Assembly (NCBI RefSeq): GCF_002571385.2
Contig: NW_019217872.1
Coordinates: 448,046-512,045 of the forward strand
Direction: 5' to 3'
DNA: 64,000 bases
DNA from: Stylophora pistillata
Taxonomy: Eukaryota
The position numbers and the translations under genes are program-made. The notes below the pieces were generated by a model, which saw only the letters and a program-made list of their open reading frames with translations, searched no databases and was not told where the DNA came from. This document shows, piece by piece, positions 26,034 through 51,013 of this stretch. Each line of letters starts with the position of its first letter. The stretch's first letter is position 1.

Positions 26034-26776
26034 TTAAACCGAGCCGTGGGCTGACACAAATGAATGAATATTTGTCTGAACTAGTTGCAAATTAGATGAG
26101 GGACAGAAACTCGGTACAATGTTATACTTGTAAGGAAGCGGTGGCACTGGTAGTGCAAATTGTTCGTAATAAGGAAACACTGCAGTTTGTATCGGATAAA
26201 ACATAGTGTTTGCTTCTTCCCACCGTAAGTTTGCTTCAAACTCAGGCGCCATTTGCTTTTTCCATTTAGTCCGTCGGTTCTGAAACCATGTTTTGACTTG
26301 AGTATCCGTAAGACGGAGACTGTTAGCCAAGTTGTTTCTCTCTGTGATCGTTAAGTATTTCTTATCTCGAAACTTTTGCTCCAAAGATTTTAACTGGCTG
26401 CTTGTGAAGGCTGTTCGCCTTCGCCGTATCTTGTTCAAGAGGTCCTCTTGTCTGGGGAACTCAGCGCCGTCGTCGATTTCATCACTGTGGGGTACGAACT
26501 TTGAGGGGCAATGTTCTAAGAGAAAGAAATGTACATCATCTTCATCATATTTTCGTCATATTCTGGAACTTTACACTTATGGTGGGACAAAGCTTTTGCT
26601 TCATTTCAATGGTTTGATGGTAACATGATTTTCCCTTCAATTGGCTTACCTTTTTGGTCCTGTTGTTGACTGGAACGTTCATCAACACAATTCGTGTGGC
26701 GCACATCAACATCGTTAATTTCTTGTTGTTTTTGCGTTGAAAGTCCAAGGATGGCATTTATGCTGAATGATGCCAT
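26034..26776 (-). CDS. NKL-subclass homeobox protein A (BarH/Tlx/NK1-like), 2 exons, 202 aa
   Basis: Exon 1 26776-26650 ([11 protein letters not shown], eh1). Phase-1 GT-AG intron 26649-26516. Exon 2 26515-26034 with homeodomain [12 protein letters not shown]...[16 protein letters not shown]. Confidence 0.92.
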
Positions 26777-26852
26777 TGCGTTTGGATATAAGGGAGGTGA
26801 AATGCGTCCTTGGACAAGTTGACTAAATTGAAAGCAACAACTATTTCTATCC

Positions 26853-26966
26853 GCTAAATATTATGATACCAACATCCGGACAATGCTAATCTGTTTGACA
26901 GCCAATTAAACATAGTCTGCTAACCTTAACTTGTTTCCACTTTACACGACAAAGGGTCGGTAAATG
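26853..26966 (-). promoter_or_regulatory. conserved proximal promoter of homeobox A
   Basis: Minus strand CATTTACCG...AAGTGGAAACA...TAATTGGCTGTCAAA...GTCCGGATGTTGGTATCATAATATTTA, shared with C and D. Confidence 0.8.
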
Positions 26967-27284
26967 ATTTGGGACTTACCGTAAACAGACATATAAGCGG
27001 TTGTCACCCGAGATGACTGTAGCATAATGAGATCATCAAATGCTTCGCCGACTAACACAGCCATTACACACTACCGCAAGTACATACTTCACTGAGTTGA
27101 CCATTGTTCAAAAATTGTTTCCGGTTTCAAATGTTCTAGAAGGAGAATCATTGACAAAACTCTATACAAAATTTGCTGATGTACCTTTACTTTTGACGTT
27201 TATATGGTGTGGATTTTGGGGAGGAGTTTGTTAAATGTTTTCATTGTTGCGTGATGGTATGGTTCATTGCGAGGAAATTGGCAC

Positions 27285-27332
27285 TATTAGTTCTGTAAAT
27301 GTCGGCCATATATCGCCAGACAATTGTCTAAT
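27285..27332 (-). promoter_or_regulatory. distal conserved element upstream of homeobox A
   Basis: ATTAGACAATTGTC-N15-GACATTT-N3-GAACTAAT matches the element at the same distance upstream of D. Confidence 0.6.
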
Positions 27333-29954
27333 CTCTCTCATATCAAGTTGCATGTGTGACGTTTTCCTGGGTATTTTAAAAGCAGGAAAAACAACGGAAT
27401 CTTTTCCTATTCTTCTGTCATGCAAATTGCAATTTATCAAGCGTAGGTGCCCAAAGGGAAATGTATTAACTGCAGCAGATAAATGATTTGTCACCAGACA
27501 AAAACTGTCAGTTTTTACCCTTTCTTAAGAGCCTTTAATAAGCTTTACTCTCCGGTCGTGTATCAACTCAAAGAATAAATATAAAGCGCAAACATGTCCT
27601 TTACTTCTTCATCAGTTGGGAATTTATGCGATGAGCTATGAGTACCACGTGACGAACGGCGGAAAAAGAGTTCAGAAATTAAGCTCCCTTATTGTGTACT
27701 TGATGAAAGATACGTATTTTAAGAGCAGACCCTCCCCCGCTAAGAGTTTAATTGGGGAGCTTTCATCACGATCGCCAAAATGTTTAAATTTAGCTCAACA
27801 TGAAGATTAAATGTTCTTGTTTCTAATCAAAACAATCTACTCCCTTCGAAGTAAAAATGTGGTATTTACAATAGACAATTTATTTATCTGCGTATCATCC
27901 CATACAGAGTATTAACCCCTGGCCGCTAGAAGTTCGCGTTTCTCGTTTTTGATATATGAACAATTTACGTCGCGTGCCATCAACCAAATCAGGCGAAAGA
28001 CATACGTAACTCATAGCATAAGCTTTCTCTAAATTTTAAGGATTATCCTCATTTTCAGACCGGTTGGTCCGGAGATGCTTAAATGAATTAGATGTTTACA
28101 AGCGCAGGGTTCCGAAAGCCTTTTAGATTTCGATCCTATGAGTGGATATGTCCTATCTCAGTCTGATCTTTTGTTTGTTTATAATCATTTATAACTCTTG
28201 AGAAAGTGGGTTTACTAAGAGGTGATTAAAGCTTTTAAAGGTGGAAATGAAAGACATTACACAGGTATAATCCCTCACAGACTTAGGCCTGCGTAATGTT
28301 CACAGATTGAGGACCATTTGACCAGTGCGTGGAGTTCCGCTGTTAAGAAACCATAAAATTGTGTGCGAATTGTGTGCGAATTGTGTCTCACAGTGAGTAG
28401 ATATTAGAAGATTATTATCTGGTGGTGCAAATGATTATCATTCTTTGATTGAGGTCATCAGACCAGACGTATTGCAGGGCATGTATTGGTGATGAACATT
28501 CCTGTAGCTTAGATTCCTTAAATGCGTATCGCGTCAAGCAAAATTGATCAGTGCGTGGGATCGTGAGTCATAAAAAATATAAGAAATAGAAAAATGTTCT
28601 CTCTCTGAACTGGTCACCATGTCGGATAAAAAAATATTTCTAAGTGAGTATTACTTCGTTTGCTCGGTTACTGAACATTTTTAGTATCAAGGAGGGCAAA
28701 ACAGAGGAATAATGATGATTTAATTAAGCGAGAAATGGGACCGAAAAAATTGTACAAAAAAATTGAACTATAAAATTGAAAAAGGTCCCATTGTACGTGT
28801 TCGAGGCCAATATTCGAGGTTAATATTGAGATATTCAAATAGTTTCGCCAACTCAATTTTGGCGACCTCCCATTAGAAAACTGCAATTACAGTCACAGTA
28901 TCGATCGTGACTTATTCTAAAAGTGCGTTATCGGAAAACGCCTCATTCAGCAGCAGAGAAAAAAAATGTAACAGTTACCTCTCTCGCACTTCACAACCAC
29001 TACTCTTTCAAATGCTAGGTTTGAAGGTTGTGGAAAATATTCAAAGTCCTGTCTAAGTTGAGGTAATTGCAACTCCTTTTGTAATGTTACAATTTACTTG
29101 GAAAGGAATATAATCGACTGAGAAAAGATATTTCAATGAAAGACATGGGATAATAGAAAAAAAAAAAACAAAGATCATATAGGGCAGTAATGAAGATGGA
29201 ACGAGGATGGCAAATATGTAATGGAGAACTGTAATACCATTTGCATATGAGAAACTTATTACTAATCAAATATTTAGGGTGAACCCAATTCGATGTGCCA
29301 ACTCAATGCAAATAAATAAAATAAAATTAGGTAAAGGCATTCAATAAACTCAGAAAAAACTAGAAAAATTTGAAAAAAATAATTTTCTTTGTATCTCCCA
29401 CTGGGATGGACAAGATGATAAGGTATTTCCAAATGATTGCCAGACAGGCATGGCAGTATTTAAAACTGTTGTAAGACTTAGAACGTAGTGTGCGACAAAG
29501 AAATTATATATTACAATCAGCTATTCTAGAAAGAAAGGCAAAGTCAATTATTGCCGCGGATTTTTGTGACCATCAAACTGATATTTTAGTTGGTAAGAGA
29601 TAGTTATTACCAGTTCAGTACTAACTTTCAACCCAAACCATAGCTACACAAGGAAACCTTTCATTACCACGTATCTACGTTTTTGTATATTTGGATCTAT
29701 GCCCAAAAATAACGCACTTTTTGCACGGTAAAATGATAAGCTATAAATCAAGAAAAATTACTAACATCGTTAAACACAATTCACCGTACGAACCAATGAC
29801 CGATTTGGAATAATACAGCAAGATTGTGTTTGGAAATACAGAGTCAATGCAGGATATGGTCTCTTACTTGGTTCAGTGTCTTATTACGTCGTATCCCGGT
29901 ACTCTGTCGCAAATCGTGGAAAGGAAGAAAACCAAGGATAGGCGGTGCCTTAAA

Positions 29955-49732: not shown

Positions 49733-49779
49733 ATTAGGCAATTGTCGGCTTCAATGAGCTTGACATTTGTTGAATTAAT
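49733..49779 (+). promoter_or_regulatory. distal conserved element upstream of homeobox D
   Basis: ATTAGGCAATTGTC-N15-GACATTT-N3-GAATTAAT, about 550 bp upstream of the ATG, as for gene A. Confidence 0.6.
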
Positions 49780-50093
49780 TCCAAGGCCTGCAAGGCCTCT
49801 AATAACATTTGTTTACAATTCCTCACGCAATTAGACGAACCTTGACTTCATTGGGAAAATTCTTTTTTAATTTGATTATTTGTTACTTCTAGAGGGTGGG
49901 TAAAAATAACCCAGTTTGAAGTTCAAAACGATCAGAGATTCAAGAGATAACCGCTGGGCTGAGGTGCTCAAATTTAACCGAAGACAAACGCTGTACATGA
50001 ACTCATATCTTCGCAATCAAATATTTGTTGATATAATTATCTACATGTCAAATTGATCGCTTATACATATTTCTGTTTATAGTTAGCGCTAAA

Positions 50094-50204
50094 CATTTAC
50101 CGGTTCTTTGTTCTCTTAAGTGGAAACATACGAAGGTTATCAGACATATCTAATTGGCTGTCAAAGAGATTAATCGTGTCCGGATGTTGGTATCACAATA
50201 TTTA
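50094..50204 (+). promoter_or_regulatory. conserved proximal promoter of homeobox D
   Basis: CATTTACCG...AAGTGGAAACA...TAATTGGCTGTCAAA...GTCCGGATGTTGGTATCACAATATTTA. Confidence 0.8.
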
Positions 50205-50284
50205 ACAGCTACGAATGGTTGTTGATTTTATTACTTTCTTGGGGAAGTTATCGTCATTAACATTCTTCTGCTCGTAAGCATCAC

Positions 50285-51013
50285 ATGTCTATGGCTTCGT
50301 TCAGTATCAATGCGATTTTGGGACGCTCTGAACAAAAAAGAGGAGATTCAAGCCCCTCAGGAGATCAACACATTCACGAATCAAGAGAAAGCACAGGCGA
50401 CAAAAGTAAGTTTGCTTCTGATTTCATTAACAAGTACTGTTGTTCAATTGAAATATACGCATCCAAAGACCTTCTCTTAACTTCGCGGAGTAATGTTTTC
50501 GCTTTAGATGACGATGGGAATCGCGCGTTGAAAGAAGAAGAGGCAGTTTGTGTCACTAATTCACCAGAGGAAAACCCAAATTACGAGGATGATATAATGC
50601 CTTCGAGCCGTGAGAGCCTTTACATCAACAAGATTCGCAGAAGACGTACAGCGTTTACCAGCACCCAATTAAAATCTCTGGAGGAGAAATTTCACGACAA
50701 GAAATACTTGACAATCACAGAAAGAAACAATTTGGCTAAGGGACTTCATCTTACAGACACTCAAGTCAAAACATGGTTTCAAAATCGAAGAACAAAGTGG
50801 AAGAAACAAATGGCACCAGACTATGAAGCGAGTTTACGGTGGGAAGAAATGAACAATATGTTTAACCATTTTCAAACTGGTTTTCCCTGCTGTGGAGAAG
50901 TTAACACTCATTTTCGCCCTGTACCACACTTTTACAATGTTATACCCAGTTTTTGTCCATCATCCAACCTCCAGGTTGTGTATTCAAATATGTCTTTACA
51001 TCCCTTCTCGTAG
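50285..51013 (+). CDS. NKL-subclass homeobox protein D; 208 aa spliced (242 aa if the 102-bp intron is retained)
   Basis: eh1 [17 protein letters not shown] donor at 50406 and TTTAG acceptor at 50507 (phase 1, as in paralogs). Homeodomain 54/60 identical to gene A. Confidence 0.92.

What the first reader, a model, noticed from the sequence alone, without database searches (positions are those of the whole stretch)
26034..51013. Four-gene cluster of eh1-bearing BarH/Tlx/NK1-like homeobox paralogs in divergent orientation
Seen: four intact two-exon genes, A(-) B(-) C(+) D(+), each with eh1 in exon 1 and a phase-1 intron upstream of the homeobox. Homeodomain identity to A is D 54/60, C 50/60 and B 41/60. 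All have T47/F49/Q50/T54 and a KYLTI loop. The closest pair (A, D) are the outermost genes and are inverted. Known: eh1 recruits Groucho/TLE; T47+T54 occurs in BarH and Tlx, and NRRTKWKKQ in NK1. Inference: a lineage-specific NKL repressor family expanded locally by duplication and inversion. I cannot assign it to a named bilaterian family.
Basis: partly seen in the sequence, partly recalled or inferred. Interest (0 to 1): 0.85.

Follow-up and report, generated by a model that had tools for sequence, protein, structure and literature searches.

The report
Ancient coral homeobox repressor gene cluster

Summary
Window 26034-51013 (Stylophora pistillata) carries four intact two-exon genes, A(-) B(-) C(+) D(+). 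Each has an N-terminal eh1 motif, a phase-1 intron upstream of the homeobox, and T47/F49/Q50/T54. Homeodomain identities to A are exactly 54, 50 and 41 of 60. RNA contigs confirm the A and B introns; B's exon 2 starts at 30373.

This is not a local, lineage-specific expansion. A, C and D are co-orthologs of Nematostella NVHD033/056, and B is the ortholog of NVHD050 ('NK-like 17'). Those genes have been left without a family since 2006. Both subtypes also occur in octocorals.

The gene order is conserved. Porites has B then A. Oculina has A, B, E, C, GPCR, D. Stylophora keeps only a decayed E pseudogene (about 38361-38685).

All genes are under purifying selection (dN/dS 0.01-0.19), and synonymous sites between paralogs are saturated.

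The family cannot be placed in a bilaterian family. The homeodomain tree puts it in an unresolved T47 group with BarH, a probable Bari group and Tlx, and outside NK1.

New here: a conserved C-terminal motif, and a roughly 90-nt promoter module (TAATTG plus TGTCA) shared by all A/C/D/E-type genes from anemones to corals.

Moderate interest: a new member of a known kind.

The parts
26034..26776 (-). Gene A (NVHD033-type, 202 aa). Exon 1 CDS 26650-26776 with eh1 at 26747-26767; intron 26516-26649; exon 2 CDS 26034-26515 with homeobox at 26250-26429. RefSeq calls it 'T-cell leukemia homeobox protein 1-like'.
   Evidence: sequence; 100% match to P0001. RNA joint 26515/26650 in 3 contig sets plus raw reads..
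26831..26999 (-). Promoter and 5' module of A that is shared with C, D and psiE. Core TAATTGGCTGTCAAA at 26894-26908; TATA-like ATAATATTTA at about 26853-26864.
29955..30763 (-). Gene B (NVHD050-type, 203 aa). Exon 1 CDS 30571-30763 with eh1 at 30716-30736; intron 30374-30570; exon 2 CDS 29955-30373 with homeobox at 30126-30305. RefSeq calls it 'barH-like 1 homeobox protein'.
   Evidence: RNA joint 30373/30571. P0138, 203 aa.
31380..33113 (-). Conserved non-coding blocks upstream of B. Window 31380-32171 is 80% identical to Oculina over 819 nt; further blocks lie at 32444-32676 and 32837-33113. They probably belong to B's 5' UTR, promoter or enhancer.
   Evidence: In one search the RNA contig that carries B runs 970 nt beyond 30850.
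37765..38685 (+). psiE, a decayed fifth paralog. The promoter block 37765-38053 is conserved with the upstream region of the intact Oculina E gene, with core motif TAATTGGCTATCAAG at 37923-37937. The homeobox remnant at 38361-38685 has several stops, a frameshift and a deletion.
   Evidence: tblastn of the E-type proteins P0277 and P0084, E 1e-6 to 9e-8 in 3.6 kb.
42969..43091 (+). Shared promoter module of C; core motif at 43031-43045.
43189..43954 (+). Gene C (NVHD033-type, 203 aa). Exon 1 CDS 43189-43306 with eh1 at 43198-43218; intron 43307-43460; exon 2 CDS 43461-43954 with homeobox at 43544-43723.
   Evidence: spliced product P0059, 203 aa; orthologs in Oculina, Acropora and Porites.
46137..47039 (-). 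Intronless rhodopsin-type GPCR (300 aa) between C and D. It sits at the same place and in the same orientation in Oculina.
   Evidence: PF00001, E 5e-42; 299-aa 7tm_1 gene between Oculina C and D; 74% nt identity over 1144 nt.
50069..50215 (+). Shared promoter module of D; core motif at 50151-50165. The whole stretch 48718-50331 aligns to the region upstream of Oculina D.
50285..51013 (+). Gene D (NVHD033-type, 208 aa if spliced). Exon 1 CDS 50285 (or 50291)-50405 with eh1 at 50300-50320; intron 50406-50507 (102 nt, in frame, no stop); exon 2 CDS 50508-51013 with homeobox at 50633-50812.
   Evidence: orthologs in Oculina and Orbicella (209 aa). No RNA was laid on D.

Best explanation
The locus is the Stylophora pistillata copy of an old anthozoan gene cluster. 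It encodes an unnamed NK-like (ANTP-class) homeodomain family with two subtypes.

Subtype 1 (genes A, C, D and the dead copy psiE) is orthologous to Nematostella NVHD033/056. Its parts, from N to C terminus, are:
- an eh1 motif at the very N-terminus;
- a Q50 homeodomain with T47, F49 and T54;
- a post-homeodomain motif [14 protein letters not shown];
- a C-terminal motif [14 protein letters not shown].

Subtype 2 (gene B) is orthologous to NVHD050 ('NK-like 17') and has its own tail motif, [15 protein letters not shown].

History. The two subtypes separated before hexacorals and octocorals split. Subtype 1 then duplicated in tandem in the stem of stony corals, giving A, C, D and E, with one block inverted. 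Sea anemones duplicated it independently.

Likely function (inferred). The proteins bind TAAT-type sites through the homeodomain and repress transcription by recruiting Groucho/TLE through eh1.

Likely regulation (inferred). All subtype-1 genes keep a roughly 90-nt proximal promoter module that combines a homeodomain site (TAATTG) with a TALE-type site (TGTCA). This points to common regulation, possibly auto-regulation or cross-regulation, and that would help explain why the cluster stays together.

B evolves extremely slowly. In Nematostella it is an early zygotic target of beta-catenin/TCF in the presumptive endomesoderm.
For: Shown:
- Gene structures and RNA joints.
- Orthology to NVHD033, 050 and 056. 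The nexus rows Nv_033, Nv_050 and Nv_056 of Ryan 2006 match the homeodomains of L031 and L032.
- Ortholog groups A, C, D, anemone and B in the tree. The B group is supported at 98/93 and octocoral Xenia is its sister at 96/93.
- Conserved order and orientation in other corals: Pocillopora B then A; Porites B then A; Oculina B(-) E(+) C(+) GPCR(-) D(+), with A next in gene numbering.
- A tandem pair in the anemone Actinia.
- In Nematostella, NVHD033 and NVHD050 lie on one chromosome, 5.5 Mb apart.
- An octocoral member carrying both eh1 and the C-terminal motif (P0374).
- Conserved motifs across the family.
- dN/dS: A 0.07, B 0.01-0.015, C 0.19, D 0.03; synonymous sites between paralogs saturated.
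- The promoter motif occurs 4 times in the window against 0.66 expected (at least 4 in none of 100 shuffles). Each copy lies 130-160 nt upstream of a family ATG, or at the head of psiE. Near-identical copies lie upstream of the Oculina, Porites and Pocillopora genes. Copies with 2-3 mismatches lie at the same offset upstream of all three anemone genes examined.
- The genome encodes a Groucho/TLE gene.

From the literature:
- Nvhd050 is expressed in the central animal domain of the blastula, is switched on at 10-12 hpf and goes down with dominant-negative Tcf (PMC3531958).
- The eh1 motif recruits Groucho (PMC10336111; also established knowledge).
Against: - No binding, repression or expression pattern has been measured for the coral genes.
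- Apart from the A and B transcripts, the RNA evidence for the coral genes comes from contigs in databases.
- The homeodomain tree does not recover subtype 1 and subtype 2 as one clade. It only fails to reject that grouping (AU p = 0.36). B is no closer to A (41/60) than NK1 is (40-42/60). Uniting them rests on the shared eh1 position, the intron phase, the KYLTI/T47/F49/T54 signature and the linkage.
- A's position in Oculina is known only from gene numbering.
- Linkage in Acropora and in Xenia is inferred from equal contig lengths only.
- The transcription-factor reading of the promoter motif is inferred from consensus sites.
- Medusozoans were not sampled in a way that could show presence or absence.
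Confidence: 0.75

Rival explanations
1. The family is the cnidarian counterpart (ortholog or pro-ortholog) of the bilaterian Bar group, that is BarH plus Bari (CG11085). On this reading it is not a cnidarian-specific family; it simply carries F49 where the Bar group carries Y49.
For: - In the homeodomain tree the family falls in a T47 clade (86/87) with BarH and with a protostome 'WY' group. That group comes from ticks, the annelid Owenia (where it is fused in a gene model with a neighbouring BarH) and the gastropod Batillaria. NK1 lies outside this clade.
- Forcing the family together with WY and BarH costs no more likelihood (6.3 lnL units, p = 0.33) than forcing the family itself to be one clade.
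- The groups share the RRRRTAFT arm, KYL[ST], [12 protein letters not shown][RK]Q and an N-terminal eh1.
- The 2006 Nematostella survey did not include CG11085, so it never tested this link.
Against: - The WY group could not be shown to be Bari, because no named reference sequence was available.
- Y49, the hallmark of Bar genes, is absent from the family.
- No Bar-group protein examined has the C-terminal NLQVVYSNM motif.
- Sixty columns cannot resolve the node.
Confidence: 0.2
2. The genes are divergent anthozoan duplicates of NK1.
For: - NK1 is the most similar homeodomain elsewhere in the Stylophora genome (40/60 to A).
- NRRTKWKKQ is shared.
- UniProt names A 'NK1 transcription factor-related protein 2'.
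- The AU test does not reject family plus NK1 (p = 0.15).
Against: - NK1 forms its own strongly supported clade (99/98) that includes the genome's own NK1 on contig C219 and excludes the family.
- This constraint costs the most likelihood of those tested (15.6 lnL units).
- NK1 has I47 and the YEQLVALENKF and KKQNPG signatures. The family has none of them.
Confidence: 0.07
3. One reading: a recent expansion specific to the Stylophora or pocilloporid lineage, with A and D as a young inverted pair.
For: A and D have the highest homeodomain identity (54/60) and lie in opposite orientation at the two ends of the cluster.
Against: - A, C and D each have their own orthologs in other coral families.
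- The arrangement is conserved in Oculina and Porites.
- Synonymous sites between A and D are saturated.
- B has a Nematostella ortholog.
Confidence: 0.02
4. An assembly artefact: alleles or haplotigs scaffolded side by side.
For: None specific to this locus. Elsewhere in the assembly two contigs, C144 and C170, carry identical Emx-type loci.
Against: - The homeoboxes are only 67-80% identical at nucleotide level.
- The introns and flanks differ.
- A and B have separate RefSeq proteins (P0001, P0138), and a separate spliced C product (P0059) exists.
- The same order is found in independent assemblies of four other genera.
Confidence: 0.01

Closest known systems
Nematostella vectensis NVHD033, NVHD056 ('NK-like 18') and NVHD050 ('NK-like 17'), the unclassified non-Hox ANTP homeodomains of Ryan et al. 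2006 and Chourrout et al. 2006
   Same: Direct orthologs. A, C and D group with NVHD033-type genes and B with NVHD050. They share the eh1 motif, the homeodomain signature and the tail motifs.
   Different: In Nematostella, NVHD033 and NVHD050 lie 5.5 Mb apart on one chromosome and have no paralog within 10 kb. In stony corals the genes form a tight cluster of 4-5 genes with an embedded GPCR. The coral A/C/D/E duplications are separate from the anemone duplications.
BarH/Barhl and Bari (CG11085) families
   Same: T47, T54, TKWK[RK]Q, an N-terminal eh1, and the same unresolved clade in the homeodomain tree.
   Different: The Bar families have Y49 and the cluster genes have F49. The cluster's C-terminal NLQVVYSNM motif was not seen in the Bar-like proteins examined. 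Published tables list no BarH or Bari in Nematostella.
NK1 (slouch / Nkx1 / ceh-1)
   Same: NRRTKWKKQ, an eh1 motif, and the highest homeodomain identity outside the family (40-42/60).
   Different: NK1 has I47, YEQLVALENKF and KKQNPG. The genome has a separate true NK1 on contig C219. The NK1 clade excludes the family.
Tlx (Hox11)
   Same: eh1, T47 and T54. RefSeq names A 'Tlx1-like'.
   Different: The cluster genes have no RRIGHPY arm before the homeodomain. Travert et al. 2023 found Tlx in 0 of 31 anthozoan genomes. Homeodomain identity is only 31-33/60.
Nedx / lms (CG13424)
   Same: An eh1-bearing NK-like family that vertebrates lack, with a loosely similar acidic stretch after the homeodomain.
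   Different: Nedx has I47 and a different helix 1-2 signature. Stylophora has two separate Nedx genes on contig C168.

Membership tests
Cnidarian NVHD033/056/050 group (unclassified 'NK-like 17/18') | Homeodomain orthology to Nv_033, Nv_056 or Nv_050 | tested here: met
   Nexus rows match L031 and L032. In the tree, B groups with Nv050 at 98/93, and A/C/D fall with the Nv033 group inside the family clade.
Cnidarian NVHD033/056/050 group (unclassified 'NK-like 17/18') | Same protein plan: N-terminal eh1, homeodomain, subtype-specific tail motif | tested here: met
   Alignment. B-type tail.
eh1 / Groucho-dependent repressors | eh1 motif FxIxxIL near the N-terminus | tested here: met
   The motif is present in all four genes and conserved from octocoral to anemone.
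eh1 / Groucho-dependent repressors | Co-repressor present in the genome | tested here: met
   TLE_N exons at G000:C1:1650482-1654187.
eh1 / Groucho-dependent repressors | Physical binding to Groucho and repression | not testable with these tools
   Needs a pull-down or reporter assay.
Tlx | RRIGHPY N-terminal arm just upstream of the homeodomain (Travert et al. 2023) | tested here: not met
   The residues upstream of the four homeodomains contain no GHPY.
Tlx | Homeodomain groups with Tlx | tested here: inconclusive
   Not grouped. The AU test for family plus Tlx gives p = 0.17. Identity is 31-33/60.
NK1 | NK1 homeodomain signature (I47, YEQLVALENKF, KKQNPG) and one-to-one orthology | tested here: not met
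   A separate true NK1 lies at C219. The NK1 clade (99/98) excludes the family.
BarH | Y49 (WYQNRR) and the QKYLSVQDR loop | tested here: not met
   All four genes have F49 and KYLTI.
Bari (CG11085) | Homeodomain groups with CG11085 or amphioxus Bari | not testable with these tools
   No named Bari sequence could be obtained. A probable Bari-like group is 37-42/60 identical and the tree leaves it unresolved.
Nedx / lms | Homeodomain signature of CG13424 | tested here: not met
   The CG13424 row has I47 and a different helix 1-2. Two separate Nedx loci exist in the genome.

The most novel reading that the evidence does not exclude
Stony corals have kept a cluster of 4-5 genes from an anthozoan-only homeobox family together for several hundred million years. 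The reason would be that its members share, and act on, one proximal promoter module (TAATTG plus TGTCA). That would make the cluster a self-regulating and cross-regulating repressor cassette, with an embedded GPCR. It would be a cnidarian example of cluster retention through shared cis-regulation outside the Hox and NK clusters.
Probability: 0.25. Interest if true: 0.6.

Novelty: new member of a known kind. Interest (0 to 1): 0.4.

Why it matters
- Public annotation gives these genes conflicting names: Tlx1-like, BarH-like, MSX-2-like, GBX-2-like, ceh-9, ceh-19, HMX2, vex1 and pnx. Any study that reads those labels, for example a claim of 'Tlx in corals', would be misled.
- Showing that the genes form one anthozoan family with two ancient subtypes gives the family a usable definition: a fixed protein plan and a conserved cluster.
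- It links the coral genes to the only functional data available, Nvhd050 in the Nematostella endomesoderm network.
- The promoter module is conserved among paralogs whose synonymous sites are saturated, and from anemones to corals. It is a small, directly testable cis-regulatory element in animals where few such elements are known.
- Tandem homeobox clusters are common, though, and the orthologs have been catalogued since 2006. The find is useful rather than surprising.

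Tried and rejected
1. Nedx/lms was a promising candidate, being an eh1-bearing family that vertebrates lack and that has two Nematostella members. It was rejected when the CG13424 row and the genome's own two Nedx loci proved different.
2. 'Barx: 4 in Nematostella' in the Hydra viridissima paper might cover these genes. Its supplement is not held, so this could not be checked.
3. The Fimbriaphyllia ancora paper reports four 'MSX' genes clustered on scaffold 12, three expressed in mouth and pharynx and one in tentacle. 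This may be the same cluster, since Acropora members are auto-named MSX-2-like. No sequences or ids could be found in the text or in the held supplements. It remains a lead only.
4. Look-ups meant to fetch Acropora genomic loci returned only transcript contigs or nothing. Acropora linkage therefore rests on equal contig lengths.
5. The protostome 'WY' group could not be named through cluster look-ups. Its automatic names are as inconsistent as those of the coral genes.
6. AU tests of four groupings (family alone, plus NK1, plus WY and BarH, plus Tlx) rejected none. Sixty columns are too few.
7. The last protein search, with the divergent member P0181, was meant to reveal a non-anthozoan host. 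It found only more unnamed coral-type paralogs that sit on the same contigs as A-type and B-type genes.
8. Searches of papers for the NVHD numbers found expression data only for NVHD050.
9. Spliced models were never joined. Searches used exon 2 by reference, or proteins returned by the databases.

Full report
**What is there**

The window is contig C89:448046-512045 of a 398-Mb genome. Gene A's product is 100% identical to a RefSeq protein of Stylophora pistillata.

A six-frame scan finds exactly four WFQNRR homeoboxes and four matching eh1 motifs. I read the splice sites from the DNA:
- A(-): exons 26776-26650 and 26515-26034.
- B(-): exons 30763-30571 and 30373-29955.
- C(+): exons 43189-43306 and 43461-43954.
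- D(+): exons 50285-50405 and 50508-51013.

All four introns are GT..AG, in phase 1, and lie between the eh1 exon and the homeobox exon.

PolyA RNA-seq contigs from three runs and raw reads from a fourth show the joints 26515/26650 and 30373/30571. That confirms A. It also corrects my first guess for B's acceptor, which was 33 nt too far upstream. The resulting proteins are the RefSeq entries P0001 (202 aa) and P0138 (203 aa).

A 203-aa product with C's junction exists in a transcript assembly (P0059).

D's intron is 102 nt long, in frame and open. This explains the single 242-aa ORF. Its splicing therefore rests on the splice signals, the shared phase, and the 209-212-aa orthologs.

Homeodomain identities to A are D 54/60, C 50/60 and B 41/60. 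T47, F49, Q50, T54 and KYLTI are present in all four genes.

I never joined exons. Searches used exon 2 by reference, or database proteins.

**Not alleles, not recent**

The four homeoboxes are 120-144/180 identical at nucleotide level. Synonymous divergence between paralogs is saturated: the estimate is undefined or about 1.7.

Orthologs show strong purifying selection:

| Gene | dN/dS |
|---|---|
| A | 0.07 |
| B | 0.01-0.015 |
| C | 0.19 |
| D | 0.03 |

**Who the relatives are**

Protein searches with exon 2 of A and of B return hundreds of anthozoan proteins. Their automatic names disagree wildly: Tlx1-like, barH-like 1/2, MSX-2-like, GBX-2-like, ceh-9, HMX2, ceh-19-like, vex1-like, pnx.

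I matched a short peptide of the Nematostella hit against the nexus file of Ryan et al. 2006 (PMC1779571). This identifies it as NVHD033. The same file shows NVHD056 as a near-twin and NVHD050 with B's signature. In that survey all three sit among the 22 non-Hox ANTP homeodomains left without a family.

Röttinger et al. 2012 equate NvHD050 with 'NK-like 17' and NvHD056 with 'NK-like 18'. They show Nvhd050 in the central animal domain of the blastula. It is zygotically activated at 10-12 hpf and goes down with dominant-negative Tcf.

**Orthology and age**

I built a tree on the homeodomain-to-C-terminus region of named taxa. It resolves these groups:

| Group | Members | Support |
|---|---|---|
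| A | Stylophora, Pocillopora, Oculina, Porites | 89/95 |
| C | Stylophora, Oculina, Acropora, Porites lobata | 88/92 |
| D | Stylophora, Oculina, Orbicella | 83/89 |
| Anemone | NVHD033, two Actinia genes, Exaiptasia | 94/96 |
| B | all corals plus NVHD050; octocoral Xenia as sister at 96/93 | 98/93 |

The A and C groups contain both robust and complex corals. Those duplications therefore predate crown Scleractinia.

An octocoral protein (Xenia P0374) has the eh1 motif, a homeodomain 85% identical to A, and the C-terminal motif. Both subtypes are therefore anthozoan-wide.

Whether medusozoans have the family was not determined.

**Synteny**

- Pocillopora has B then A.
- Porites harrisoni has B then A, 9 kb apart.
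- Oculina patagonica has B(-), E(+), C(+), a rhodopsin-type GPCR(-), D(+), with the A ortholog next in gene numbering. The GPCR between C and D is the same gene as window 46137-47039.
- Actinia has a tandem pair.
- In Nematostella, NVHD033 (14.33 Mb) and NVHD050 (8.86 Mb) share a chromosome but are not adjacent.
- Several unnamed assemblies carry three or four family members on contigs of the same length.

**A fifth, dead member**

Oculina's E gene has no intact counterpart in the window. Its upstream block, however, aligns to 37765-38053. E-type proteins also hit 38361-38685 with stops, a frameshift and a deletion. The remnant still reads '...NRRTKWR*'.

The Stylophora cluster is therefore A(-) B(-) psiE(+) C(+) GPCR(-) D(+).

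**Shared promoter module**

blastn of the Oculina and Porites loci against the window shows that the 120-170 nt just upstream of A, C and D resemble each other and their orthologs. The alignments show invariant blocks. They include TAATTGGCTGTCAAA and a TATA-like ATAATATTTA about 85 nt before the ATG.

The 15-mer occurs four times in the window at up to 2 mismatches, against 0.66 expected. Each copy lies upstream of A, C, D or psiE. Exact copies stand upstream of the Oculina C, D and E genes and of the Porites and Pocillopora A genes.

All three anemone genes examined carry a 2-3-mismatch version at the same offset. Further blocks around it (ATTTACCG, TTTGTT) are also conserved. B-type genes lack the module.

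TAATTG is a canonical Q50 homeodomain site and TGTCA is a TALE (Meis-type) site. Reading the module as an auto-regulatory or cross-regulatory input is my inference.

Upstream of B, a separate 819-nt block (31380-32171) is 80% identical to Oculina.

**Which family?**

The Stylophora genome holds clear separate genes for NK1 (contig C219), two Nedx, Gbx, Mnx, NK6, NK7, Msx, Hmx and others. I recognised these from their signatures.

An exhaustive HMMER search with A's homeodomain finds three nearest groups outside the family:
- NK1 (40-42/60).
- A protostome group with [12 protein letters not shown], from ticks, Owenia (next to BarH) and Batillaria (37-42/60). This is probably Bari, but I could not verify it.
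- Gbx (34-38/60).

In a 64-row homeodomain tree the family lies in a T47-bearing clade (86/87). That clade also holds the WY group, BarH, Tlx/Lbx, Barx/Bsx-like genes, Nedx and Hhex. NK1 forms its own clade (99/98) outside it. Inside the T47 clade nothing is resolved.

AU tests reject none of the groupings tried:

| Grouping | p |
|---|---|
| Family as one clade | 0.36 |
| Family + WY + BarH | 0.33 |
| Family + Tlx | 0.17 |
| Family + NK1 | 0.15 |

Tlx membership fails its defining RRIGHPY arm, and Tlx is reported absent from all anthozoan genomes surveyed. BarH membership fails Y49. Nedx fails its signature.

A link to the Bar group remains open. The 2006 survey did not include CG11085.

**Mechanism**

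- Shown: an intact Q50 homeodomain (Pfam E 1e-21); conserved eh1; conserved tail motifs; purifying selection; spliced transcripts of A and B; a Groucho gene in the genome.
- Inferred from established knowledge of eh1 proteins: DNA binding at TAAT-type sites and Groucho-dependent repression.
- Inferred from Nematostella: an early endomesoderm role for the B type, downstream of Wnt/beta-catenin.
- Unknown: targets, expression domains in corals, and the role of the C-terminal motif.

**Novelty**

The orthologs have been catalogued since 2006 and the coral genes are in RefSeq, under misleading names. I found no description of the coral cluster, its dead fifth member, the family's motifs or the shared promoter in the searchable library. 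However, Chourrout 2006, Kamm and Schierwater 2006 and DuBuc 2012 are not held there. A four-gene 'MSX' cluster drawn for Fimbriaphyllia may be the same locus.

I rate this a new member of a known kind, of moderate interest.

Noticed in passing
window 37765-38685 (+): A decayed fifth paralog (psiE). Its promoter block and core motif are still conserved. The homeobox remnant has stops, a frameshift and a deletion. The intact ortholog is Oculina P0084.
   Followed up: yes
window 26831-26999(-), 42969-43091(+), 50069-50215(+), 37850-38053(+); L031:9839, L041:4685 and 9837: A proximal promoter module of about 90 nt (ATTTACCG .. TTTGTT .. TAATTGGCTGTCAAA .. TATA-like). It is shared by all NVHD033-type paralogs and conserved from sea anemones to corals, although synonymous sites between the paralogs are saturated.
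   Followed up: yes
window 46137-47039 (-): An intronless 300-aa rhodopsin-type GPCR inside the cluster. It is conserved in place and orientation between Stylophora and Oculina.
   Followed up: partly
window 31380-32171, 32444-32676, 32837-33113: Long conserved non-coding blocks upstream of B, up to 80% identical to Oculina over 819 nt. That is more conserved than B's first coding exon. The RNA contig carrying B runs 970 nt beyond 30850, so part of this may be 5' UTR.
   Followed up: partly
window 50406-50507: D's intron is 102 nt long, in frame and without a stop. Intron retention would add 34 residues rather than truncate the protein. Intron-blind gene callers report 242-aa products of this kind (for example P0034).
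   Followed up: partly
window 39471-41300: Probable transposon debris in the B-C spacer. It includes a DEAD-box helicase fragment (39923-40312, PF00270 E 1e-10), a weak zf-AD-like ORF (40687-40980) and two inverted low-complexity ORFs with nearly the same peptide (39501-39773 and 41052-41300).
   Followed up: partly
G000:C144:447104-447277 and G000:C170:435926-436099 (L013, L014): Two contigs carry identical Emx-type homeobox loci with identical flanks in translation. They may be uncollapsed haplotigs in the assembly.
   Followed up: no
proteins P0240-P0254: Many database 'proteins' with 2-10 homeodomains are gene models run together across tandem homeobox clusters. One example is P0247 of Owenia, which fuses BarH with its WY-type neighbour. 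They inflate scores in homeodomain searches.
   Followed up: no
P0005: A 198-aa Logan product carries C's exon junction, yet it scored 90% identical to A's exon 2. It may be a chimeric transcript assembly of paralogs.
   Followed up: no
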